In this document: positions 41-12,863 of the stretch, in pieces
Numbering within the stretch: position 1 is the stretch's first letter
Layout of the letters: each line of letters starts with the position of its first letter
Program-made: the position numbers and the translations under genes
Sequence record: MF498774.1
Strand: one strand, 5' to 3'
Length of the DNA: 64,000 nucleotides
Notes under the pieces: model-generated
Seen by the model: only the letters and a program-made list of their open reading frames with translations
What the model was told of the DNA's origin: nothing
Databases searched by the model: none

Positions 41-511
41 ATGGCCGGAAATAATACATACAAAGGTCAATACTTTGTAAAGAATAGAGAAAAATATAAA
101 GGAGACCCAAAAAAGGTTACCTACCGTAGTTCGTGGGAAAAGTATATAATGGAGATGTTGGATAATAATCCAGACGTTAGATATTGGAACAGCGAATGTA
201 TGGTCATTCCGTATTTTTCTAATGCAGATGGAAAGAAACGACGTTATTTTATGGATATGTGGATACAGTGGTCCGACGGTTCTATTTCTCTCTGGGAAGT
301 TAAGCCTAAAAAAGAATGTTTTCCACCAGTACCACCAAAAAGAAATACATTAAAAGCAAAAAATGCTTATATTCAAGCTGTGTATACATGGCAAGTCAAT
401 AACGACAAATGGAAAACCACCGCTGAATTATGCAAGAAAAAAGGGTGGAGATTTAATATAATTAATGAGGACTCATTGAGAGCAATGGGTTTCAAAGGAC
501 TTACTAAATGA
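41..511 (+). CDS. gp4: Head completion nuclease, T4 gp4-like (TnsA-type PD-(D/E)XK fold)
   Basis: YKGDPKKVTYRSSWE and WNSE..IPY..RRYFMD..EVKP motifs typical of gp4; late promoter and SD upstream. Confidence 0.9.
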   Translation: MAGNNTYKGQYFVKNREKYKGDPKKVTYRSSWEKYIMEMLDNNPDVRYWNSECMVIPYFSNADGKKRRYFMDMWIQWSDGSISLWEVKPKKECFPPVPPKRNTLKAKNAYIQAVYTWQVNNDKWKTTAELCKKKGWRFNIINEDSLRAMGFKGLTK

Positions 512-1506
512 TATTCGAAATAACTGAACGTGCAGAGTCCACAACAGAAAAACGCAATAGAAAACAATGGATTGATGTTGGTGTTGATTATATGAACGCC
601 AAGAAAAAGAACCCAAGTCTTACTGCAAAGAAATATGCAGAGGAAAAAGGGTTGAATTATGAAACATTCAGTAGAGCTATGCGCAGACACAGAGAAGAAA
701 TAAAGACTTATTATTCTCTGGTAAACCCAAACAAGAATAAACAACAATGGATTGAGCTTGGTGTTGATTATTTGACACAAAAAGAAAAGAGTAGCATTAC
801 TCTAAAAAATTATATTGAAGGACGTGGACTTAATAAAGAAACCACGGAGCGGGCATTCAGAAGATTCAAGCAAGATATTCTACTGGCTAAGAAGTTAAAA
901 GATGCGCAAGTAAGCGGAAGAAAACTATCTAAAGCCGAAAAATATCAGATGTTGTTGGCTGACTTTAGAAATAAAGTAAGACAACACGAAAAAGAGCCTG
1001 TAAAGTCTCAGAAGAAGTCAACGGAATGGTTTAACAATTTCATAAAGAAAAACGTTCGTGGTCACCAAGTAACAAGACCAATTGCTGGTCGATTGTATAC
1101 TTTCGCATATGACGCAAAACATAAGGCAACACTACCATACTGGGATAAATTCCCCCTGATCGTATATCTTGGCCTAAGTGCAAAACACAAAGGTTTGATG
1201 TTGGGTCTCAACCTTCACTATATCCCGATCAAAGCCCGTAAAGAATTTATGGAAGAGTTGCTGAAACATGCAACCACAGAGAGGATTACCAACCGTACAT
1301 CCCTAAATATCAACTGGGGTAAGGTTAAGGGAATGAGAGGTGCAGACCATATGATCAAAGCGTATTTGCCGGGTCATATTAAGGGTCCATTAATGGAGAT
1401 TAAACCGCAGGATTGGAGTTCTGTCATTAATCTACCGACTCAACGGTTTGTATCTGGTGTTCCTCCGAAGACCTATAATACGAATTCCGTTTGGAGATCA
1501 TACTAA
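508..1506 (+). CDS. gp2: DNA end protector protein, T4 gp2-like, with N-terminal extension
   Basis: C-terminal GRLYTFAYDAKHK.TLPYWDKFPLI and GLNLHYIP motifs. Confidence 0.9.
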   Translation: MIFEITERAESTTEKRNRKQWIDVGVDYMNAKKKNPSLTAKKYAEEKGLNYETFSRAMRRHREEIKTYYSLVNPNKNKQQWIELGVDYLTQKEKSSITLKNYIEGRGLNKETTERAFRRFKQDILLAKKLKDAQVSGRKLSKAEKYQMLLADFRNKVRQHEKEPVKSQKKSTEWFNNFIKKNVRGHQVTRPIAGRLYTFAYDAKHKATLPYWDKFPLIVYLGLSAKHKGLMLGLNLHYIPIKARKEFMEELLKHATTERITNRTSLNINWGKVKGMRGADHMIKAYLPGHIKGPLMEIKPQDWSSVINLPTQRFVSGVPPKTYNTNSVWRSY

Positions 1507-2447
1507 TGAACTTAATACCACCTATTCCAACCATAGATAGTATGATAGATAGTACTATCGGGTTTGGTGAAGATTTATTAAACGATGGTGGGGATGCAAG
1601 CGAGATCCCCGATCTAACTAGGTTTATGCGGAAAGTTGAGAATACCGATTTGGCTAGACCAAACATGTTTATTGTAAGGTTCGGAGATTTCCGAACCTCT
1701 ATATTCAGTGATGGTGTTTTTGATAGGGATTTACCAATATTTCCTGATTCAAGTAGCGGGATGGACGTCAATGATAGTCTTTTCTCTGGTACAAGTTATG
1801 CTTGGCATAGAGTTCAGGACATTGCTTTGGGACAAGCACACAAAATCCTCACGCCTAGCATGAAGAAGATTTTTGGTGCTTGGGACCCGTCCTTGATCCG
1901 GATCATACCGGGAGCAGGAGAGATCCTTGATGGATTTTTGGGAACTGATTACGATGTAAACAGAGATCTAGCATTAATGGTAAAGAGTGTCGGTCTTCCT
2001 AGTTCTACTTTGGAAACGACAATCAACCGTACAGACAAACTACCTAGACACGAAGTTAGAGGTAGAAACTACGGAACCATGAGTATGACGTTTTACTGTT
2101 CCCCTTCTTACGAGGAACGTTCTTTGATGCTAACATGGCAGAATACAATTGTCAACCCAAGAAATGGACAATTTGGATTTTATAATACGTATGCAAAGGA
2201 TATTGACGTCATCACGTTAGACCGTCATGGAGTTAAGCAATCCACTGTACATAATACAGGGTGCTTTCCCATAGAGGTAGGTGAAGTTCAACTAGATTTT
2301 GAGAACAATTCTCAGGTAGCAACCTTTACCGTCACATTCGCTGTATCAACCACAGTGCATGTTCCTACTAAGGGTGAAGAGAACACCATCGACTCTATAG
2401 AGAGTATCATAAGACGTACTACAGGCGTTGTGAAAGCCATTCGTTAA
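1506..2447 (+). CDS. gp54: Baseplate tail-tube initiator, gp54-like
   Basis: DLARPNMF N-terminus plus a gp19-like tube domain; ATG overlaps the gp2 stop. Confidence 0.75.
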   Translation: MNLIPPIPTIDSMIDSTIGFGEDLLNDGGDASEIPDLTRFMRKVENTDLARPNMFIVRFGDFRTSIFSDGVFDRDLPIFPDSSSGMDVNDSLFSGTSYAWHRVQDIALGQAHKILTPSMKKIFGAWDPSLIRIIPGAGEILDGFLGTDYDVNRDLALMVKSVGLPSSTLETTINRTDKLPRHEVRGRNYGTMSMTFYCSPSYEERSLMLTWQNTIVNPRNGQFGFYNTYAKDIDVITLDRHGVKQSTVHNTGCFPIEVGEVQLDFENNSQVATFTVTFAVSTTVHVPTKGEENTIDSIESIIRRTTGVVKAIR

Positions 2448-2451
2448 TACT

Positions 2452-2476
2452 AAGCCATCCTACGGGGTGGCTTTTT
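2452..2476 (+). terminator. Intrinsic terminator after gp54
   Basis: AAGCCATCC-TACG-GGGTGGCTT followed by T run. Confidence 0.8.
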
Positions 2477-2492
2477 CATATCTATAGATCTC

Positions 2493-2604
2493 GAACGTAG
2501 TGAGACGGCGTAGCCGCCTGTTCGCTTCGCTCACACACTTTCTAATTATAGATTTTCTATATAAATACTTATAGAGACTTTATAGTTTGATTGCAAGTGA
2601 AACT
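2493..2604. repeat. Copy A of a dispersed intergenic element (GC hairpin module plus AT-rich core)
   Basis: 2540-2574 matches 32702-32736 at 34/35 nt. Confidence 0.85.
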
Positions 2605-2679
2605 ATCTAAGATTAAGTCTTGAAGAACATCATGTTACAATGTACTAAATAAGTATAGATCTATAAGGGATTTTTAACT

Positions 2680-3465
2680 ATGACAAACAAAACCACGATT
2701 GACAAGAGTGTACTTCTTGCTGCTATGCAGAAAAACGTACAACAGACCAATGTGACTTTATCAGATGGTAGGAAGATCAAGGTTCGTGCTTTTTTGATGA
2801 AAGAAATGAAACTGTTGATGTTGGCTAACGAAGCCAATACTGGAATCGATGATGCGATCATTCAAATCGTAAAAAACTGTATCCTAACTGATAATGTTGA
2901 TGTAGACCTTTTACCTGTGTTTGACTTGGAAGCAGTTTATCTAGCTTTGTATAAGTTATCAAAAGCAAGTCCAACTGTCCCGGTTATGTTTACTTGCGCC
3001 AACGAAATTCTCGATGAAGATGGTAATGTTCAATATGACCAATATGGTGAAATTGTTCGTTGTGGTTCTGATATTAAAGTAAACGTAAACTTGAATAACG
3101 CTAAATTGTCTGATGCGCCAGATAACAAAATTGTTCTGAATGAGAACATGACAGTTTATATGAGATATCCTAATATCAGCGAGGTTGAATATTTCAACGT
3201 AGAAGTTGAGTCCGACTTGTTTAACTTAATCAATCGCTGTATTGACGAAGTTCATATGGGAGATCAGGTTGTTAAGGTTGGTGTTGATATTCCGTATGAG
3301 GATATTTCTGAAATTATGGAATACGCCGATTCAGTTGCTTTGACCAAAATGGGTAAATTTGTAACATCCCTCCCCCAACATACTCTAAATATACCTGTAA
3401 AGTGTAAAAAATGTGGACACCAAGAAATTGTTACACTTAAAGGGGTAGAAAGTTTTTTCGCATAA
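2680..3465 (+). CDS. gp26: Baseplate hub assembly chaperone, gp26-like
   Basis: RAFLMKEMKLL, LPVFDLE, MRYP and C-terminal CKKCGH..LKGVESFF motifs. Confidence 0.85.
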   Translation: MTNKTTIDKSVLLAAMQKNVQQTNVTLSDGRKIKVRAFLMKEMKLLMLANEANTGIDDAIIQIVKNCILTDNVDVDLLPVFDLEAVYLALYKLSKASPTVPVMFTCANEILDEDGNVQYDQYGEIVRCGSDIKVNVNLNNAKLSDAPDNKIVLNENMTVYMRYPNISEVEYFNVEVESDLFNLINRCIDEVHMGDQVVKVGVDIPYEDISEIMEYADSVALTKMGKFVTSLPQHTLNIPVKCKKCGHQEIVTLKGVESFFA

Positions 3466-3629
3466 CGCTTGTTAACCATACCATATACGATCATTTTAAT
3501 ACGGTATATAAGCTTAGAAAAGATGGATGGAGCCATTCGGACCTTGAGGATATGACCCCCTTTGAATTTGGTGTTTATGTTCACCTCTACCTAAACGATC
3601 TCAAAGAACAGGCGAGAGAAAAGGACTAA
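3459..3629 (+). CDS. gp51: gp51-like hub assembly ORF with no own start codon; probable -1 frameshift extension of gp26
   Basis: Manual translation RITLVNHTIYDHFNTVYKLRKDGWSHSDLEDMTPFEFGVYVHLYLNDLKEQAREKD*; gp51-like LEDMTPFE..Y..L pattern; stop abuts the tape measure start. Confidence 0.75.
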   Translation, partial: RITLVNHTIYDHFNTVYKLRKDGWSHSDLEDMTPFEFGVYVHLYLNDLKEQAREKD

Positions 3630-5498
3630 GTGATGATTGACAAGCAGAAACAGAACGAACTTGATAAATCGGTTCGAGATGTCACGGATGCTATGGATAT
3701 TGTTTCTGATTCGATGCTTAAGTTGGACGACAAGACAGAAAAGTTGTCCAACTCAACAAAAGACCTTACCGCGTCTTATGATATTACCTCTGATTCCAGT
3801 CTGGAAGTCGCACAAGAACAAGAAAAATTAGCGAACCAGATAAAAGGTGCCAGAAAGGATAATAAGCGTAGTAATAAGGTTGAAAACGAATTAGTTTCAG
3901 CTAGACGAAAGCAACTGGAAGACATTTTAAATAATAAACAACCCCTAGTGGATTATAGCCAAGGTGTAAAAAGTCAGAACCCGGAACAGGGGGAAACTGC
4001 CAAACCTATGCAGGAAGACACTAGGGAGACTTTGAAAGAATTTATACAACGCGAAGTTGGTGATCGTCGTGAATTTGTGGAAAATTTCAAAGAAGAAAAT
4101 CAAAAAACTGGTAAATTTGTTCGAGAGATAGCAAAAAAAGCTAATATAGTTGATCGAATGAAGAAATCAGAAACATCAGCAACAGCGAAAATACTTGGTC
4201 ATACTATGTCCGCTGGTATCGGTATGGTTACTGGAACCATAAACGATTTGTTATCAACTATTCCCGGTTATAATCAGGCCGCTAATGCAACGAAGTTTGT
4301 TGGTGGGTCTATTATTGATGCACATAACGCCCGTAAGGAAAAGAAATTAGATGCAAAAGCGAATGCGGCTTATGAAGAGAAGAAGGCTGATGCTACTTCT
4401 AGATTCCAACAGATCCCACAAAACAAACCAGAAGACAAAGTAAAAACAGATAGAAATAACCAAGAGCAAAAGAAAGAAAGACAAGAAAATGGAAGAGAAC
4501 GAGAGAACAACGAAAAGCGTCATAAAAGCTTAATCGATGTTCTTAAAGGTATCCAGATGTCCATGTTGATCGGTAAACTGATTGGTGGTGTTGGATTTGT
4601 TCTTAGTGGTCTTGTTTCTGGTATCAGTGTTCTATCTGGTGCGGTTCTTGGTTTGGCCCCTATGATTGCGGGTGCCCTATCTGCTGCTGTTGGTGGTTTA
4701 ATTGCTAAGTTTTCGGGGTTGTTTGATAAGATACCGGGATTGGGAAGTAAGACCCCTACACCATCGTCTGGCTCTGGTGGTGTTAATCCAAACGATGTGT
4801 CTAAGGATCCTAAGAAGTCTCCGAAAACTACACAACCGGATGGAAAGAAGCCACCTACACCAGAACCAAGACCGGGGCAACCAGCAAAAATTGAGACACC
4901 TAAAACAAAGACACCTACCCCTAAAGGGAAGGCTGGTATTTTGTCAAGGGCTGCTGATCTTGGTAAAAAGGGTTGGTCTGTTGCTACCGATGCTGCAAAA
5001 TCAGCCTCAAAATTTATACCAAAAAGCGCATTAACTGGTGCTGGTATGGCGGTACGTGTCGCCGGTAGAGCAATTCCTTTTGTTGGTGCTGGCTTGATGG
5101 CTTATGAGTTGTATAACTTCGCCAAAGAGAATCCAGATCTGTTGGATAAGGGTGTTGATGCTGCGAAGGGTGCTTGGGAAAGTCTTACCGGGTCATTGTT
5201 TGGAAAAGCTAATGCTAGTGAAGCTCAACCGGAATCTAAATTAGGGAATGAAATTAAGGCGGGTGAAAATGAGCCTGTATTTAAAACCCTTGAGAAAAGA
5301 AACCAAGAGGTTGAAGAATTCCGAGCTAAACAACAACGTGAAAAGGAAGAACGAGATGCACGACGTCAAGAAGGTGCGTTAATGGCTGCTGTAAATAATA
5401 CCACATATAATAGTATGAATTCCGTTCTACCGTCTGGTTTTGGTGAATTTAGACCAGACCAACCACAATATTCATATGGGGTTCAACCGTCAACATGA
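3630..5498 (+). CDS. gp29: Baseplate hub / tape measure protein, gp29-like
   Basis: Long helical, low-complexity protein with a hydrophobic Gly-rich segment, downstream of gp26/gp51. Confidence 0.65.
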   Translation: MMIDKQKQNELDKSVRDVTDAMDIVSDSMLKLDDKTEKLSNSTKDLTASYDITSDSSLEVAQEQEKLANQIKGARKDNKRSNKVENELVSARRKQLEDILNNKQPLVDYSQGVKSQNPEQGETAKPMQEDTRETLKEFIQREVGDRREFVENFKEENQKTGKFVREIAKKANIVDRMKKSETSATAKILGHTMSAGIGMVTGTINDLLSTIPGYNQAANATKFVGGSIIDAHNARKEKKLDAKANAAYEEKKADATSRFQQIPQNKPEDKVKTDRNNQEQKKERQENGRERENNEKRHKSLIDVLKGIQMSMLIGKLIGGVGFVLSGLVSGISVLSGAVLGLAPMIAGALSAAVGGLIAKFSGLFDKIPGLGSKTPTPSSGSGGVNPNDVSKDPKKSPKTTQPDGKKPPTPEPRPGQPAKIETPKTKTPTPKGKAGILSRAADLGKKGWSVATDAAKSASKFIPKSALTGAGMAVRVAGRAIPFVGAGLMAYELYNFAKENPDLLDKGVDAAKGAWESLTGSLFGKANASEAQPESKLGNEIKAGENEPVFKTLEKRNQEVEEFRAKQQREKEERDARRQEGALMAAVNNTTYNSMNSVLPSGFGEFRPDQPQYSYGVQPST

Positions 5499-6058
5499 TA
5501 CATAATCAAGCACACATAACAAACATGCGTCTGGAAATCCCAGACGCAAACACAACCGCCAACTTTGTAACATCAGCTCAATCTGTTGTTCTTCCAACTA
5601 TGGAAATGGATATAACAAGGGTTTCGATAAATCAGATGACGTCCGGACTTATGCCGGGTTCGAAGATCATTTACGAACCATTTAGGATTAGATTTTTGAT
5701 TGATGAAAATTTCGAATCTTATAAAGAGTTGTATCAATGGATGATCTCTGTTACTGATAGTAGAACTTTCAATTCCACCGCCCATCTACCGGGTGCTAGA
5801 CCTAGATCTATTTTGGTTCATATTCTGGATAACTCAAAAAAGAATATAGTATTGACTTTCAAGTTTCATGACCCATTCCCGAGTTCATTGGACGATATAG
5901 AATTGTCCTATGTTGATGACGGAAACCCAGCCCTTATAGGTAATGTAACATTTAGTTACTCATCTATGAGTGTTGTTGGTGTAAACGATTTGGAAATCCT
6001 ACCAAAACAAAACCCGGTCGGTATCGGTGCAGGACACCCATTCCAAAGTAAAATCTAA
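5495..6058 (+). CDS. gp3: Tail tube terminator / tail completion protein, gp3-like
   Basis: QSVVLP, YEPFRIRFLIDENFESYKELYQWM and FPSSL motifs. Confidence 0.85.
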   Translation: MIHNQAHITNMRLEIPDANTTANFVTSAQSVVLPTMEMDITRVSINQMTSGLMPGSKIIYEPFRIRFLIDENFESYKELYQWMISVTDSRTFNSTAHLPGARPRSILVHILDNSKKNIVLTFKFHDPFPSSLDDIELSYVDDGNPALIGNVTFSYSSMSVVGVNDLEILPKQNPVGIGAGHPFQSKI

Positions 6059-7313: not shown

Positions 7314-8327
7314 ATGTCTAAGATGTTTAATGAGCTGTTTGAATCTATGACTCAAGCAGTCGCGATGAAGGCTCTTGGTTTGACTGGTAAGTTTACTGAT
7401 GACCAACTAAAGGCTGCATATCGCAAGGCAGCAAAGGATAACCACCCAGACCGTGGTGGTTCCACCGAAAAAATGCAGGCAGTAAACCAAGCTTACGAAG
7501 AACTGAAAAAATCCGGTTCTCCTGCAACCCAAGAAGCTACATGGGCACAGAGAAAACAGAAACAGGAAGAAGAGAAACACGTTGTAACTAACTTCGTGAC
7601 CCATATGTTTGACAAGTTTTTTGATACTCAGGCTTATCTCGACTACTTCCAAAAGATGAGCGGTAAAAAGTTCACATTTGAACGTAAAATTACCGTTGGT
7701 ACTTGGGGAACTTCTTCTGTCGATTATAAATTTACGTCGGAAGACCGTACAGTTTTCTTTGATCTGAATGCAATGGCTCATGTGTTTATCACCAAAGCTC
7801 TGGGTGCAGGTATTGATAAACCTGAGTTGGATAAGATGGGTGTTTTCACTGAGGTTCTGATTGACCGTAAAAAAGTAAAAATGACCCAAAGCAATTACAA
7901 CCAATCCGAAACTGAAAAGTTTATGAAGGATCCGAAAATCCTTTTCCCAGAAACCAAGCTAAAGAAAGCTTTTTCTGGTGATAAAAAGGTTAAACCGCTC
8001 AAGAAAGCCGATTATGTTCTTTTCGTCAAAAAAGAACTTGAAGGAAAACATTTGGGCGGTGATGATTTCGCAGTTGACATTGGTAACGGTTCCGTGATTT
8101 ATTTTTCTCGTATGACATGGATGCGAAAGGGTGTATGGAATATCAGTGGTCGTACAGGAACAAAAGAACGTTGGTCTGTAACTACTCCGTTCTATGAAAC
8201 TGAAACACCGGAAAACATGGATGTGATGAAAGAACTTGTACAGACTATGAAATCTCATAGTTCTTCTGGTGGTGCTCAGATGGAAGCTCTTGTCAAGAAA
8301 TTTATGTTGAAAGCTAACAAAGTTTAA
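7314..8327 (+). CDS. J-domain (DnaJ-like) protein
   Basis: LKAAYRKAAKDNHPDRGG..EKMQAVNQAYEEL with intact HPD; CCTAAATA upstream. Confidence 0.9.
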   Translation: MSKMFNELFESMTQAVAMKALGLTGKFTDDQLKAAYRKAAKDNHPDRGGSTEKMQAVNQAYEELKKSGSPATQEATWAQRKQKQEEEKHVVTNFVTHMFDKFFDTQAYLDYFQKMSGKKFTFERKITVGTWGTSSVDYKFTSEDRTVFFDLNAMAHVFITKALGAGIDKPELDKMGVFTEVLIDRKKVKMTQSNYNQSETEKFMKDPKILFPETKLKKAFSGDKKVKPLKKADYVLFVKKELEGKHLGGDDFAVDIGNGSVIYFSRMTWMRKGVWNISGRTGTKERWSVTTPFYETETPENMDVMKELVQTMKSHSSSGGAQMEALVKKFMLKANKV

Positions 8328-10089: not shown

Positions 10090-10182
10090 GCGTGAGTGGC
10101 GAAGTTGGTTGAAACGCATCGGACTTAAAATCCGATACTGCATAATGGCACATCGTGGGTTCGATTCCCACCTCACGTACCA
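10090..10182 (+). tRNA. tRNA-Leu(TAA)
   Basis: Cloverleaf, TCGGA-CTTAAAA-TCCGA anticodon arm, long variable arm, GTTCGATT, encoded CCA. Confidence 0.95.
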
Positions 10183-10417
10183 AATACGAGATGATAAACT
10201 CAAATTACTTTTGTTGAATGAGCTTTTTGGACGTTATGTGAGTTTATCATCTCTCAAATTCAATATGAGATGCTTAATATGAACGTATACATCAGAAATT
10301 ACATGTGTGGAGTCCTTTGGGGTAGTATCTTCAACGAAGAACACTGTAAAGGTAAATGTGTAAAGATTATGCGCGGTAAACATTTGAAGCCTTTCTATCA
10401 AAAATCGAGATATTAAA

Positions 10418-10807
10418 ATGAAAGTGAAGCTTGGGGCTTACAACCTTAATGAAAAAAGTTCTTTGGTTAATACGAACGGATTAAAATTCATTTTGAATGA
10501 ACAAGTTATAGATGAATTTTCTAAAAAACTACCTGTTCTAATCAATTTTGGTCAAAAATGTTTTAACATTGATAATGCTAAAGATACTCCGGATCCGGTT
10601 GGTATTCTTAATTCCATAGAAACTTACAAGAAAGATAATATCATTATTGTTACTGGTGATGTAGAAATAACCAATGACAAAGTATATGATGTTCATGGGT
10701 GCCTTCCTTCTTTTTGTGTCCGATCTTTAGCTATTCGTAACGGTGATACTTACAAAGTTGGAGAAATTATTGCATGGGATATGGAAATATATGAAGGTTT
10801 ATCATGA
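10418..10807 (+). CDS. Hypothetical protein
   Basis: ORF track. Confidence 0.65.
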   Translation: MKVKLGAYNLNEKSSLVNTNGLKFILNEQVIDEFSKKLPVLINFGQKCFNIDNAKDTPDPVGILNSIETYKKDNIIIVTGDVEITNDKVYDVHGCLPSFCVRSLAIRNGDTYKVGEIIAWDMEIYEGLS

Positions 10808-11202
10808 ATAAACATGATATTCATCTCATTGGTATTAGTAAGTTTATCAAGAAAGGTCTTACTGTGGTTCAATCAAGTTTGATCTTCAAACAAACCAGTG
10901 AAGAATGGAAAAATATCCATGGTGTTGATGTAGACAAGATTTATTGCTATATTAACAACGAGGGAAAGGATATCTACGCAATTGGTAGACTTAGATCCTG
11001 TTGCGGACCTTGGTTGAGTGTTAGTTGTCGGTCTCTCCGTAAAAAAGGTTATATAGCATTTGACTTTAACGATGAAATTGAGATACCATATGGTTCAGGG
11101 ATGAAAACTGCTTATAGGGTATTGTTTTCTGACACCCCTAAATACGAGTATGATGAAGAAGCTAGACATCCAGTCGCTTACTTCGAAAAATACTTCAAAT
11201 AA
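10804..11202 (+). CDS. Hypothetical protein
   Basis: ORF track; ATGA overlap with the upstream gene. Confidence 0.7.
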   Translation: MNKHDIHLIGISKFIKKGLTVVQSSLIFKQTSEEWKNIHGVDVDKIYCYINNEGKDIYAIGRLRSCCGPWLSVSCRSLRKKGYIAFDFNDEIEIPYGSGMKTAYRVLFSDTPKYEYDEEARHPVAYFEKYFK

Positions 11203-11246
11203 AAGTTAAACATCCTTTCTAACTGTGATATGATGTTTATATAAAT
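11198..11246 (+). promoter_or_regulatory. Sigma70-type promoter for the main tRNA run
   Basis: One mismatch versus 10039-10087; ends 2 nt before tRNA-Arg. Confidence 0.75.
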
Positions 11247-11247
11247 T

Positions 11248-11324
11248 GCGCTGTTAGCTCAGTTGGATAGAGCAACGTTCTTCTAAAGCGTGGGTCACTG
11301 GTTCGAATCCAGTACGGCGCACCA
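11248..11324 (+). tRNA. tRNA-Arg(TCT)
   Basis: Cloverleaf, loop CTTCTAA, encoded CCA. Confidence 0.95.
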
Positions 11325-11408
11325 CGGGATGTGGTGAAATTGGCAGACACACTAGATTTAGGTTCTAGCGCCATAGGCGTGACGGTTCGAGTCCGTCCAT
11401 CCCGACCA
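11325..11408 (+). tRNA. tRNA-Leu(TAG)
   Basis: CTAGA-TTTAGGT-TCTAG anticodon arm, encoded CCA. Confidence 0.95.
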
Positions 11409-11409
11409 A

Positions 11410-11485
11410 GCGGGTAAGGTGTTTATGGATACATGCAAGCCTTCCAAGTTTGAGTAGACCGGATCGTTACCGGCTACCCGCTCCA
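11410..11485 (+). tRNA. Atypical tRNA-Gly(TCC)
   Basis: 76-nt cloverleaf, loop CTTCCAA, encoded CCA; A8, U14, T-loop ATCGTTA. Confidence 0.85.
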
Positions 11486-11496
11486 AGATTTAAAAT

Positions 11497-11566
11497 TGAT
11501 GTGTTACAGCTATCAGCTCACCGTTGAAAGAATACGGATAAGTCGGCTCGACTAAAGAACATATCA
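11497..11566 (+). ncRNA. Candidate 70-nt four-way-junction RNA
   Basis: 9-bp closing stem plus three short arms, between two tRNAs. Confidence 0.5.
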
Positions 11567-11569
11567 TTT

Positions 11570-11646
11570 GGCCCCTTAGCTCAGTTGGTTAGAGCAACCG
11601 ACTCATAATCGGTTGGTCACTGGTTCGAGTCCAGTAGGGGCCACCA
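11570..11646 (+). tRNA. tRNA-Ile2(CAT), ileX-like
   Basis: GGCCCCT acceptor stem and body like enterobacterial ileX; loop CTCATAA. Confidence 0.9.
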
Positions 11647-11668
11647 AATTTTTGATGAGAGCTATATT

Positions 11669-11863
11669 ATGTCTGGTATAAAATCCATAATTGAAAATTG
11701 GTCAGTTGGTGATGGTATAATCCATTGGAAGAATGGACGCCATAGTTTAGTAGTCTTTGGGTTTGCTCCAAATGGAGAACCTGCCTTTAAGTTTAAAGGT
11801 AAGAGTAAACTTACATCAGTAAGACAGATCGAAAAATCCATAGTTAATGCATATATTCTATAG
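11669..11863 (+). CDS. Hypothetical protein within the tRNA island
   Basis: 64-aa ORF with SD. Confidence 0.55.
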   Translation: MSGIKSIIENWSVGDGIIHWKNGRHSLVVFGFAPNGEPAFKFKGKSKLTSVRQIEKSIVNAYIL

Positions 11864-12020
11864 TTGTAAGCTCTCACGAATTTAATGGTCGTTGACCTTA
11901 CGATAATAATGAAGCGATACAGAGTCCCATCGCTTCTAAAAATATCAAAAGGGATGTTGATGCGCGTATGTAGCCGGGTTATAATGACCAAGATTCATGA
12001 AGGGTGAAAGACCACCCTAA
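11864..12020 (+). ncRNA. Candidate structured RNA
   Basis: Consecutive hairpins, including GAAGCGAT/ATCGCTTC (11911-11936). Confidence 0.35.
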
Positions 12021-12027
12021 ATATCAT

Positions 12028-12105
12028 AGCGGGGTGGAGAAGTCAGGAGTTCTCGCCAGACTCATTATCTGGAAATCGGTGGTTCAAATCCACCTCCCGC
12101 TTCCA
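12028..12105 (+). tRNA. tRNA-Met(CAT), initiator-like body
   Basis: AGCGGGGTGGAG start like fMet; CCAGA-CTCATTA-TCTGG arm; encoded CCA; CCTAAATA at 12016-12023. Confidence 0.9.
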
Positions 12106-12106
12106 A

Positions 12107-12182
12107 TGGCGTGTAGTTCAGTAGGTAGAACAGCGGACTGTTAATCCGTATGTCGTGGGTTCGAATCCCACCTCGCCAGCCA
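12107..12182 (+). tRNA. tRNA-Asn(GTT)
   Basis: GCGGA-CTGTTAA-TCCGT arm, encoded CCA. Confidence 0.95.
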
Positions 12183-12188
12183 AATTCT

Positions 12189-12279
12189 GGATGTTCGGCT
12201 ACGATGGCGGTGTAGCGGCGGACTGTAAATCCGTTCCCTCTGGGTAAACAAGTTGGTTCGAATCCAACAGCATCCACCA
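12189..12279 (+). tRNA. tRNA-Tyr(GTA)
   Basis: GCGGA-CTGTAAA-TCCGT arm, long variable arm, encoded CCA. Confidence 0.93.
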
Positions 12280-12282
12280 AAT

Positions 12283-12430
12283 AGAAGAAGTTAGAAGACG
12301 TTCTGATAAAATCCTCGGAGACGATGCCCCCTTGCGGTTTTAAACCGTTACGGATAAGCACGGGGTAATCCAAATCAACCATTATAGGGATGTGGTCATC
12401 TGGTATGTAAAATACAGTTGGTTTGGAACT
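12283..12430 (+). ncRNA. Candidate structured RNA of about 150 nt
   Basis: 11-bp stem 12369-12379/12417-12427 plus nested stems; no + strand ORF. Confidence 0.45.
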
Positions 12431-12433
12431 TTT

Positions 12434-12509
12434 CGGTGATTAGCGCAGTTGGTAGCGCGTCTGGTTTGGGACCAGAGGGTCACAGGTTCGAGTCCTGTAT
12501 CACCGACCA
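12434..12509 (+). tRNA. tRNA-Pro(TGG)
   Basis: TCTGG-TTTGGGA-CCAGA arm, encoded CCA. Confidence 0.95.
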
Positions 12510-12787
12510 CTTAGCACAAAGAACGGGTAACGACGTATGCCCCGGAATAAGCCAGCCATAGAGAATCTGGATATCCTGAAACGTGCCTTTAGGTTTCAGG
12601 CGGGATTGGTAGTATAAAGACGATATGGTAACTACTCCTTGACAAGCAGGGTTGAACTTGAGGTAACTGTCCTTTACCAAACAACGAACAGATGGACAAA
12701 ATCAGTTGAACGTCCTTCCTCCTTGTGATAGCATGTCAACTACATTAGGATATAATCACAGTCTAACGATCCTGATTATAATCCGCT
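12510..12787 (+). ncRNA. Candidate structured RNA of about 280 nt
   Basis: Multiple 5-8 bp stems, possible pseudoknot, no + strand ORF, between two tRNAs. Confidence 0.55.
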
Positions 12788-12863
12788 GCCGAATTAGCTC
12801 ATCTGGTAGAGCACAGCCTTTGTAACGCTGGGGTGGTCCGTTCGAGTCGGACATTCGGCACCA
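12788..12863 (+). tRNA. tRNA-Thr(TGT)
   Basis: Cloverleaf, loop TTTGTAA, encoded CCA. Confidence 0.93.

What the first reader, a model, noticed from the sequence alone, without database searches (positions are those of the whole stretch)
3440..3629. Candidate -1 programmed frameshift fusing gp26 to a start-less gp51, a lambda G/GT-like chaperone pair in a T4-type tail module
Seen: gp26 ends AGT TTT TTC GCA TAA, so a T-TTT-TTC slippery heptamer (3453-3459) lies one codon before the stop. The -1 frame is closed by TAA at 3438-3440, has no ATG until deep inside the conserved motif, and reads a 56-aa gp51-like domain whose stop (3629) abuts the tape measure start. A slip gives a 316-aa fusion alongside the 261-aa gp26. 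An SD-like AGGGG (3441-3445) sits just upstream, as in dnaX. Established: lambda-type G/GT tail chaperones are made by -1 frameshift immediately upstream of the tape measure gene, while T4 gp26 and gp51 are described as separate genes. Inference: gp26/gp51 here are a G/GT equivalent, and a conserved 'FF' end in gp26 homologues could be a preserved slippery site.
Basis: partly seen in the sequence, partly recalled or inferred. Interest (0 to 1): 0.85.

Follow-up and report, generated by a model that had tools for sequence, protein, structure and literature searches.

The report
Frameshift site in tail chaperone gene
The gp26 tail/baseplate chaperone gene of this T4-like Aeromonas phage ends in a slippery run of T's that very probably lets a few ribosomes slip back one base and add a 56-residue gp51-like tail, as lambda does for its G/GT tail chaperones; the site is real and strongly conserved, but the idea has been in the literature since 2022.

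Summary
The window is Aeromonas phage AS-yj (Ceceduovirus). gp26 (2680-3465) ends AGT TTT TTC GCA TAA. The in-phase heptamer is 3453-3459. The -1 frame is open 3441-3629 and has no ATG/GTG/TTG before 3552.

The -1 peptide is homologous to the C-terminal part of gp51 (PHROG 634, E 2e-12; hhalign to T4-type gp51 residues 200-242).

In 95 of 96 related junctions that have this -1 ORF, the heptamer T TTT TTY sits in the same phase next to the stop. This holds even in a GC-rich phage that otherwise never uses TTT. Four Tevenvirinae, where gene 51 is a separate divergent gene, keep Phe-Phe but as TTC TTT.

Substitutions just after the gp26 stop fall mostly on -1-frame third positions (16/11/48).

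A -1 ribosomal shift giving a 316-aa long form beside the 261-aa gp26 is therefore the best explanation (about 0.75). No protein evidence exists, and the window has no convincing RNA stimulator.

The G/GT analogy is not new. [quoted passage not shown] I could not read that paper. None of the 30 fetched GenBank records annotates the shift.

The parts
2680..3465 (+). gp26 (TAC-N, short chaperone form), 261 aa
   Evidence: PF12322 T4_baseplate, E 1.1e-54, matched to the last profile position. phrog_150, E 6.7e-59, profile positions 8-232 of 282. AF2 model with pLDDT 85.8.
3453..3459 (+). Slippery heptamer T TTT TTC, in phase, one codon before the stop
   Evidence: Read directly from the sequence. 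Conserved in 95 of 96 related junctions that have the -1 ORF, and absent in 4 Tevenvirinae without it.
3463..3465 (+). Zero-frame stop TAA of gp26, bypassed by shifted ribosomes
3459..3629 (+). -1 frame extension: 56 codons plus the TAA at 3627-3629. This is the gp51-like C-terminal domain (TAC-C). The -1 frame itself is open from 3441.
   Evidence: phrog_634 'baseplate hub assembly catalyst', E 2.2e-12. phrog_150 positions 230-282, E 0.035. hhalign of the -1 peptide alignment against T4-type gp51 residues 200-242: probability 83%, E 8.9e-6. Third-position substitution bias just after the gp26 stop. No ATG/GTG/TTG before 3552.
3441..3445 (+). SD-like AGGGG, 7 nt upstream of the heptamer. A role as stimulator is not supported.
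   Evidence: Present. It codes the conserved Lys/Arg-Gly, and equivalent purine-GG strings occur in non-shifting Tevenvirinae gp26.
3467..3513 (+). Weak hairpin starting 7 nt after the heptamer. Not significant.
   Evidence: -8.4 kcal/mol, z -1.43, 19 of 200 shuffles fold as well. No conserved structure in relatives. No Rfam match.
3630..5498 (+). 622-aa ORF (GenBank start 3633), candidate tape measure protein. Its start abuts the -1 ORF stop.
   Evidence: phrog_11300, unknown function. No detectable homology to T4-type gp29. The model is almost all long helices but has pLDDT 40. It lies between the chaperone pair and a gp3-like gene. Identity is inferred.
1491..2447 (+). Upstream gp54-like tail-tube-family gene, followed by a terminator-like hairpin at 2452-2473
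   Evidence: phrog_45 'tail tube', E 1.1e-46, and a weak PF06841 match. GenBank product 'baseplate-tail tube initiator'. Terminator scan.
5495..6058 (+). gp3-like tail completion / sheath stabiliser gene downstream of the 622-aa ORF
   Evidence: PF06841, E 1.3e-6, and phrog_45. GenBank annotation.

Best explanation
**Mechanism proposed: a programmed -1 ribosomal frameshift.** Most ribosomes translate gp26 to the TAA at 3463-3465 and release the 261-aa short chaperone. A minority shift while the two Phe-tRNAs sit on TTT (3454-3456) and TTC (3457-3459). Both tRNAs re-pair one base back, on TTT TTT at 3453-3458. These ribosomes then read CGC at 3459 and 55 further codons in the -1 frame and stop at 3627-3629. 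The result is a 316-aa long form: the gp26 domain plus a 56-residue gp51-like C-terminal domain.

**Proposed function (inferred, not shown).** By analogy with lambda G/GT and with the T4 hub-assembly chaperones gp26 and gp51, the gp26 domain would hold the tape-measure-like product of the next gene. The rare C-terminal domain would link that complex to tube or hub proteins. Neither form would end up in the virion.

**Relation to T4.** In T4-type phages the same two forms are made from two separate genes. Gene 26 gives the short form. Gene 51 gives a gp26-like domain with the same C-terminal domain in one frame.

**What is shown and what is not.** Shown: the sequence anatomy, the homology, the conservation, and coding selection in the -1 frame. 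Inferred: that the shift is ribosomal, its efficiency, and the binding partners.
For: 1. **Anatomy.** The heptamer is in phase, the -1 ORF is open, and there is no canonical start before 3552.
2. **Homology.** The -1 peptide matches phrog_634 (gp51) with E 2.2e-12, and positions 230-282 of phrog_150. T4-type gp51 (AR1, 250 aa) covers phrog_150 positions 13-281, while gp26 (208 aa) covers 14-235. The gp51 N-terminal region aligns to the gp26 profile. The -1 peptides align to gp51 residues 200-242 with probability 83%.
3. **Conservation of the heptamer.**
   - T TTT TTY sits in the same phase in 95 of 96 junctions from Aeromonas, Vibrio, Cronobacter, Citrobacter, Pseudomonas, Stenotrophomonas, Ralstonia, Xanthomonas and Acidovorax phages and from cyanophages.
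   - The amino acid before Phe-Phe varies (Asp, Ser, Ala, Asn), but its codon always ends in T.
4. **Synonymous-codon control.**
   - Phe codons elsewhere in these gp26 genes are 82 TTT to 83 TTC.
   - ACP17 uses 0 TTT and 12 TTC, with 8% third-position T, yet its gene ends GAT TTT TTC.
5. **Natural negative control.** Four Tevenvirinae have a divergent gene 51 and end gp26 with GAA TTC TTT followed by 3-4 more codons. They have no heptamer.
6. **Coding selection with no start codon.**
   - In the 15 codons straight after the gp26 stop, differences fall 16/11/48 on -1-frame positions 1/2/3 over 8 pairs.
   - Window against phage 65 gives 1/1/9, with 8 synonymous and 2 non-synonymous codon changes.
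   - The first canonical start codon wanders between lineages.
7. **Gene packing.** The -1 stop overlaps or abuts the start of the next large ORF in all lineages.
8. **Motif class.** All-pyrimidine heptamers and UUY A-site codons are shift-prone in E. coli (PMC4066793).
9. **Literature.** gp26 and gp51 are hub assembly chaperones (PMC3004832). The lambda G/GT model is reviewed in PMC5009743. Vladimirov et al. 2022 is known to me only as cited.
Against: - There is no protein, ribosome-profiling or RNA evidence for any of these phages.
- The window has no convincing 3' stimulator: the hairpin is -8.4 kcal/mol with z -1.4. No structure is conserved across relatives.
- The SD-like element is uninformative.
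- Five lineages have an ATG overlapping the gp26 stop, so a free C-terminal peptide may also be made there.
- One lineage, Vibrio phage 1.244.A, has the -1 ORF without an in-phase heptamer.
- A run of six T's cannot exclude RNA polymerase slippage, which would give the same protein.
- phmmer of the -1 peptide against 1.84 billion representatives found no adjacent in-frame fusion.
Confidence: 0.75

Rival explanations
1. Transcriptional slippage. RNA polymerase adds one extra U in the T6 run (3453-3458) in a fraction of transcripts. Normal translation of those transcripts then gives the same 316-aa long form.
For: The site is a homopolymer run. Three lineages have seven T's: pf16, RSP15 and VmeM-32. 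The protein product would be identical, so sequence alone cannot exclude this. No conserved RNA stimulator of ribosomal shifting was found. The title of the 2022 paper mentions a non-translational mechanism, though a citing paper reads that as separate genes.
Against: Bacterial slippage is described on runs of 9 A or T (PMC5009743); here there are six. The seventh base is C in about 92 of 95 junctions, where a longer run would slip better. That C also makes the conserved Arg codon of the -1 frame, so this argument is weak. Strong hairpins 5-10 nt downstream in S-WAM1, S-SZBM1, ACG-2014j and ACP17 fit ribosomal stimulators and would do nothing for the polymerase.
Confidence: 0.08
2. Independent expression. 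The -1 ORF is translated as a free peptide of about 55 aa. Ribosomes would restart after gp26 termination, or initiate at a near-cognate codon next to the stop (ATA 3462, ACG 3465). No fusion to gp26 would be made.
For: An ATG overlaps the gp26 stop (TAATG or TGATG) in ValKK3, Bhz51, RSP15, S-CRM01 and Vibrio 1.244.A. Annotators call such ORFs 'baseplate hub assembly catalyst'. Vibrio 1.244.A lacks the in-phase heptamer.
Against: The window and phage 65 have no ATG/GTG/TTG for 31 codons after the shift site, yet those codons are under purifying selection. There is no good SD at a suitable distance from ATA or ACG. This model does not explain the invariant synonymous choice NNT TTT TTC, least of all in GC-rich ACP17. 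The one form known in T4-type phages, gp51, carries this domain fused to a gp26-like domain.
Confidence: 0.1
3. Chance or relic. The heptamer simply encodes the conserved Phe-Phe, and the -1 ORF is an unexpressed remnant in this phage.
For: Phe-Phe is conserved as protein even in Tevenvirinae. GenBank leaves 3466-3632 unannotated.
Against: The -1 peptide is 100% identical in all 15 Ceceduovirus records, while the DNA differs by up to 3.2%. Both differences from CC2 inside the ORF are synonymous. There is third-position bias and homology to gp51. Codon choice is fixed against background usage.
Confidence: 0.02

Closest known systems
[quoted passage not shown]
   Same: Same genes and same idea. 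gp26 is the short form (TAC-N). The long form (TAC-NC) carries the gp51 C-terminal domain. Citing papers credit the paper with poly-T slippery sequences in TAC-N genes of T4-like phages and with the separate short and long genes of some T4-like phages. My data reproduce both patterns.
   Different: I could not read the paper. I therefore cannot say whether Ceceduovirus or the Aeromonas phages were included, how wide its survey was, or which mechanism it favours for the poly-T sites. No fetched GenBank record implements the shift.
Lambda gpG/gpGT and the conserved -1 frameshift of tail assembly genes (Levin 1993; Xu, Hendrix and Duda 2004; reviewed in PMC5009743)
   Same: Two overlapping ORFs lie just upstream of the tape-measure-type gene. 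[quoted passage not shown] There would be a rare long form and an abundant short form, neither in the virion (for lambda; for T4 gp51).
   Different: There is no detectable sequence similarity. gp26 is about twice the size of typical G-like proteins. Fold similarity to the HK97 chaperone is only a hint. The ratio of forms and the binding partners are untested here, and the downstream gene is not proven to be a tape measure.
T4 gp26 and gp51 as two separate, divergently transcribed genes
   Same: The window's gp26 is a PF12322 / phrog_150 member. The -1 domain aligns with gp51 residues 200-242.
   Different: In T4-type phages the long form is one continuous ORF on the other strand, and gp26 has no heptamer (TTC TTT). 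In the window the long form can arise only by a change of frame.
Phage T7 gene 10A/10B -1 frameshift
   Same: A U-rich shift site with a Phe codon near the end of the short form, decoded by bacterial ribosomes (PMC5009743; compared in PMC12846349).
   Different: A capsid gene rather than a chaperone. The first triplet of the T7 motif is not homogeneous, whereas here all six positions before the C are T.
E. coli dnaX tau/gamma frameshift (heptamer plus upstream SD-like element plus downstream hairpin)
   Same: A heptamer with an SD-like string upstream.
   Different: Here the SD-like string is explained by protein coding. Its spacing of 7 nt is, from my own knowledge, shorter than in dnaX. No significant downstream hairpin exists in the window.

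Membership tests
G/GT-type tail assembly chaperone pair with programmed -1 frameshift | Second ORF overlaps the end of the first in the -1 frame and lacks its own start | tested here: met
   The -1 frame is open 3441-3629. The first ATG/GTG/TTG is at 3552.
G/GT-type tail assembly chaperone pair with programmed -1 frameshift | [quoted passage not shown] | tested here: met
   T TTT TTC at 3453-3459, one codon before the stop. The motif belongs to a shift-prone class.
G/GT-type tail assembly chaperone pair with programmed -1 frameshift | Arrangement and slippery site conserved among diverged relatives | tested here: met
   95 of 96 junctions. Codon-usage control and Tevenvirinae negative control both agree.
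G/GT-type tail assembly chaperone pair with programmed -1 frameshift | Located between tail tube genes and, immediately downstream, the tape measure gene | tested here: inconclusive
   The upstream neighbour is of the tube family. The downstream 622-aa ORF has the right size and is predicted all-helical, but with pLDDT 40 and no homology to gp29 or any named tape measure.
G/GT-type tail assembly chaperone pair with programmed -1 frameshift | Tail assembly chaperone fold of the first ORF | tested here: inconclusive
   Foldseek against PDB found nothing with E <= 0.001. The highest-probability hit is 2ob9, the HK97 tail assembly chaperone (probability 0.77, E 0.62, TM 0.50 by target). BFVD gave one mycobacteriophage chaperone at E 0.019.
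G/GT-type tail assembly chaperone pair with programmed -1 frameshift | Two proteins with a common N-terminus actually made, with the long form rare | not testable with these tools
   Needs proteomics or ribosome profiling of infected cells.
T4 gp26 family (PF12322 / phrog_150) | Full-length profile match | tested here: met
   PF12322, E 1.1e-54, profile positions 6-219 of 219. phrog_150, E 6.7e-59.
T4 gp51 'baseplate hub assembly catalyst' (phrog_634; long form within phrog_150) | C-terminal domain homologous to gp51 | tested here: met
   phrog_634, E 2.2e-12, positions 55-112 of 121. hhalign to AR1 gp51 residues 200-242, probability 83%, E 8.9e-6.
T4 gp51 'baseplate hub assembly catalyst' (phrog_634; long form within phrog_150) | gp26-like N-terminal domain and C-terminal domain in one continuous ORF | tested here: not met
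   In the window the two parts are in different frames. AR1 gp51 has both in one ORF.
dnaX-type stimulated -1 frameshift | Functional upstream SD-like element and downstream stable hairpin | tested here: not met
   The hairpin has z -1.43. The SD-like string is also present in non-shifting relatives.
Transcriptional slippage sites | Long homopolymer run (about 9 A or T in bacteria) | tested here: not met
   The run is 6 T's. The criterion is taken from PMC5009743.

The most novel reading that the evidence does not exclude
**Three routes to the long chaperone form.** T4-like phages appear to use three interchangeable ways of making it.
1. An invariant heptamer placed one codon before the stop, working without any conserved RNA stimulator. 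This covers the window and most non-Tevenvirinae lineages.
2. A start codon overlapping the stop, which may also release a free C-terminal peptide. This occurs in the KVP40-like, Menderavirus, RSP15, S-CRM01 and Vibrio 1.244.A lineages.
3. A duplicated, fused gene: Tevenvirinae gp51.

**What could be new.** If the 2022 paper did not document the family-wide in-phase heptamer and its loss in Tevenvirinae, that pattern would be new. So would a shift that depends on the adjacent stop rather than on RNA structure.
Probability: 0.15. Interest if true: 0.5.

Novelty: already known. Interest (0 to 1): 0.28.

Why it matters
**For biology.** The result supports the view that the short/long tail-chaperone principle of lambda-like phages also applies to T4-type contractile tails. 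It also explains why 'gp51' looks start-less or missing in many T4-like genomes.

**For annotation.** This is the practical value.
- None of the 30 annotated records I fetched joins the two frames.
- They either leave a gap, as in AS-yj at 3466-3632, or call truncated ORFs of 26-60 aa from internal ATGs.
- About 1,300 phage records carry a gp26 homologue.

**Limit.** This is not a discovery. The concept was published in 2022.

Tried and rejected
- **Homologues of the -1 peptide among called proteins.** The word-indexed search found none. phmmer against 1.84 billion representatives found only short ORFs of 26-57 aa plus spurious long hits, and no adjacent in-frame fusion.
- **Diverse gp26 alignment as a locus query.** Single-protein scans gave 9, 2, 0 and 80 loci.
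- **Downstream RNA stimulator.** It is weak in the window. It is strong in only four of the other lineages. No consensus structure appears across 56 cyanophage junctions. There is no Rfam match.
- **SD-like AGGGG as stimulator.** Rejected, because the same purine-GG string is present in non-shifting Tevenvirinae.
- **The 622-aa ORF as a gp29 homologue.** BLASTP, hhalign and PHROGs were all negative. The AF2 model was too poor (pLDDT 40) for a fold search, so none was run.
- **gp26 profile against PDB sequences.** Nothing found.
- **Reading Vladimirov et al. 2022.** The paper is not held. Most citing papers only list it in their references.
- **Literature searches.** Searches for gp26/gp51 with 'frameshift', and for 'baseplate hub assembly catalyst' with 'frameshift', found nothing relevant.
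Full report
**What the window is.** Bases 2600-3700 are 100% identical to Aeromonas phage AS-yj (MF498774.1; Straboviridae, Emmerichvirinae, Ceceduovirus). They are 96.8-99.7% identical to 14 other records of that group. GenBank annotates 2680-3465 as 'baseplate hub subunit' and 3633-5498 as 'hypothetical protein'. It leaves 3466-3632 empty.

**The observation.**
- gp26 (261 aa) ends AGT TTT TTC GCA TAA.
- The heptamer T TTT TTC is 3453-3459, in X XXY YYZ phase, with one sense codon before the stop.
- The -1 frame is open from 3441, after TAA at 3438-3440, to TAA at 3627-3629. That stop abuts GTG (3630) and ATG (3633) of the 622-aa ORF.
- The first ATG, GTG or TTG in that frame is at 3552-3554, the 32nd of the 56 post-shift codons.
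- A shift would give 260 + 56 = 316 residues.
- ORFs of at least 120 aa in the window hold 49 in-phase heptamers of this type. This one has the longest -1 continuation: 56 codons, against 31 for the next.

**What the two pieces are.**
- The zero-frame ORF is a full-length gp26. It matches PF12322 with E 1.1e-54, up to the last profile position, and phrog_150 positions 8-232 of 282.
- The -1 peptade matches phrog_634 'baseplate hub assembly catalyst' (gp51) with E 2.2e-12. More weakly (E 0.035), it matches positions 230-282 of phrog_150, which is exactly the part of that profile the gp26 ORF does not reach.
- The T4-type phage AR1 explains this. Its gp26 (208 aa) covers phrog_150 positions 14-235, and its gp51 (250 aa) covers 13-281.
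- The gp51 N-terminal 185 residues align to my gp26 profile.
- An alignment of eighteen -1 peptides aligns to gp51 residues 200-242 with probability 83% and E 8.9e-6.
- T4-type gp51 is therefore a gp26-like domain plus the C-terminal domain in a single frame. The window encodes the same two modules in two frames.

**Comparative test of the shift site.** tblastn with the -1 peptide and with gp26, fetched records and IMG/VR loci gave 96 junctions in which a gp51-like ORF follows gp26 in the -1 frame.
- In 95 of them, T TTT TTY lies in the same phase. The last base is C in all but three.
- One sense codon separates the heptamer from the stop in 94 junctions, and none in S-CRM01.
- The hosts span Aeromonas, Vibrio, Cronobacter, Citrobacter, Pseudomonas, Stenotrophomonas, Ralstonia, Xanthomonas, Acidovorax and Synechococcus. 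gp26 identity falls to about 25%.
- The residue before Phe-Phe varies (Asp, Ser, Ala, Asn), but its codon always ends in T.
- Elsewhere in these gp26 genes Phe is coded 82 times by TTT and 83 times by TTC. GC-rich ACP17 uses 0 TTT and 12 TTC, with 8% third-position T, yet ends GAT TTT TTC.
- Four Tevenvirinae (AR1, EcS1, Mineola, CGG4-1) serve as a negative control. Their gene 51 is a separate, divergently transcribed gene. They keep Phe-Phe but code it TTC TTT after GAA, run on for 3-4 more codons, and have gene 25 in the -1 frame.
- The single exception with a -1 ORF is Vibrio phage 1.244.A. It has a five-T run in another phase and an ATG overlapping the stop.

**Is the start-less part translated?**
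- All 15 Ceceduovirus records encode an identical -1 peptide. Both differences from CC2 inside the ORF are synonymous in that frame.
- I compared 8 pairs of relatives over the 15 codons directly after the gp26 stop, which is upstream of any start codon in the window. Differences fall 16, 11 and 48 on -1-frame codon positions 1, 2 and 3.
- For the window against phage 65 the split is 1, 1 and 9, with 8 synonymous and 2 non-synonymous codon changes.
- The first canonical start codon in the -1 ORF differs from lineage to lineage, so no conserved independent start exists.
- In the -1 peptide alignment the two Phe are invariant, and the next residue is Arg in at least 90% of sequences. That Arg codon is built from the heptamer's C plus the first two bases of the last gp26 codon, and the amino acid encoded by that last codon varies.
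- The -1 stop overlaps or abuts the start of the next large ORF in every lineage.

**Stimulators.**
- The window has only a weak hairpin, 3467-3513: -8.4 kcal/mol, z -1.43.
- Strong hairpins 5-10 nt downstream exist in S-WAM1 (-25.7 kcal/mol, z -7.5), S-SZBM1 (-25.3), ACG-2014j (-16.2) and ACP17 (-22.5).
- No structure is shared, even among 56 cyanophage junctions. There is no Rfam match.
- The SD-like AGGGG encodes the conserved Lys/Arg-Gly. It has equivalents in the non-shifting Tevenvirinae, so it is not evidence.
- All-pyrimidine heptamers with a UUY A-site codon are shift-prone in E. coli without further help (PMC4066793). That would suit the low long-to-short ratio known from lambda, about 1:30 (PMC5009743).

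**Rivals.**
- *Transcriptional slippage* would give the same protein and cannot be excluded from sequence. However, bacterial cases use runs of about 9, and here there are six.
- *Independent initiation or restart* is plausible in the five lineages with TAATG or TGATG at the junction. It is not plausible in the window. It also leaves the codon-level conservation of the heptamer unexplained.
- *Chance or relic* is contradicted.

**Context.**
- The upstream neighbour is a gp54-like tube-family protein, followed by a terminator-like hairpin.
- Downstream lie the 622-aa ORF and then a gp3-like gene.
- The 622-aa protein has no detectable homology to T4-type gp29 or to any named family.
- Its AF2 model is nearly all long helices but has pLDDT 40. 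'Tape measure' is therefore an inference from size, position and composition.
- The gp26 model (pLDDT 85.8) has no significant PDB match. Its highest-probability hit is the HK97 tail assembly chaperone 2ob9 (probability 0.77, E 0.62).
- In BFVD the fold is widespread among myovirus 'baseplate hub' proteins.

**Literature and novelty.**
- Leiman et al. 2010 list gp26 and gp51 as hub assembly chaperones and say nothing of frameshifting (PMC3004832).
[quoted passage not shown] It is not held in the library.
- One citing paper says it shows that some T4-like phages carry one short gene and one longer fused gene instead of frameshifting (PMC10885494).
- Another cites it for TAC-N and TAC-NC isoforms and for poly-T -1 slippery sequences in TAC-N genes of T4-like phages (PMC12846349).
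- My data reproduce both patterns independently.
- I therefore rate the concept as already known. What remains is a well-supported but unannotated instance. The flags of all 30 fetched annotated records show no joined CDS.

**Verdict.** Novelty is low, and interest is 0.28.

- I also repeated, once, the junction string quoted in the finding.
- No sequence joining the two frames was built. All translations were single-frame reads of the DNA as it stands.

Noticed in passing
window 10090-12863: A cluster of 10 tRNA genes on the + strand: Leu x2, Arg, Gly, Met x2, Asn, Tyr, Pro and Thr. Typical of large T4-like phages.
   Followed up: no
window 3466-3632; L003 1609-1689; L004 1543-1695; L005 1561-1683; L007 1615-1728; L013 1573-1692: Annotation gap or artefact. 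GenBank either leaves the -1 ORF unannotated or calls truncated ORFs of 26-60 aa from internal start codons, named 'hypothetical protein' or 'baseplate hub assembly catalyst'. No fetched record joins the frames.
   Followed up: yes
L009 1520-1580, L011 1511-1571, L008 1520-1580, L015 1520-1580: Strong hairpins starting 5-10 nt after the heptamer in cyanophages S-WAM1, S-SZBM1 and ACG-2014j and in Acidovorax phage ACP17 (-16 to -26 kcal/mol, z -3.4 to -7.5). They are lineage-specific and not conserved across 56 cyanophage junctions.
   Followed up: partly
L035 1757-1780 (Vibrio phage 1.244.A): The only junction with a gp51-like -1 ORF but no in-phase heptamer. gp26 ends TCA CTT TTT CGC TAA, with an ATG overlapping the stop. 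It may rely on translational coupling or on single-tRNA slippage.
   Followed up: no
L018 3323-3327; L030, L031, L037 junctions: In ValKK3, Bhz51, RSP15 and S-CRM01 an ATG overlaps the gp26 stop while the heptamer is retained. Both a fused form and a free form of the C-terminal domain might be made there.
   Followed up: partly
window 508-1506: The 332-aa ORF combines a gp2-type DNA end protector domain (phrog_429, residues 136-332) with an N-terminal HTH DNA-binding module (phrog_32288, residues 1-69). GenBank calls it hypothetical.
   Followed up: no
window 7314-8327: A 337-aa ORF with an N-terminal DnaJ (J-domain) match (PF00226, E 5e-9), annotated as hypothetical.
   Followed up: no
window 2452-2473: A terminator-like hairpin (9 pairs plus a T tract) directly after the gp54-like gene. 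gp26, the -1 ORF and the 622-aa ORF therefore probably form their own transcription unit.
   Followed up: no
BFVD hits to the gp26 model: Several 'baseplate protein' entries of 312-316 aa (for example from uncultured marine phages and Pseudomonas phage PaBG) align over about 300 columns. They might be natural in-frame long forms. Their sequences could not be fetched.
   Followed up: no
L031 (Ralstonia phage RSP15), L035 (Vibrio phage 1.244.A): Both records carry an 'Ackermannviridae' taxonomy line but have a T4-type gp26 followed by a gp51-like ORF.
   Followed up: no
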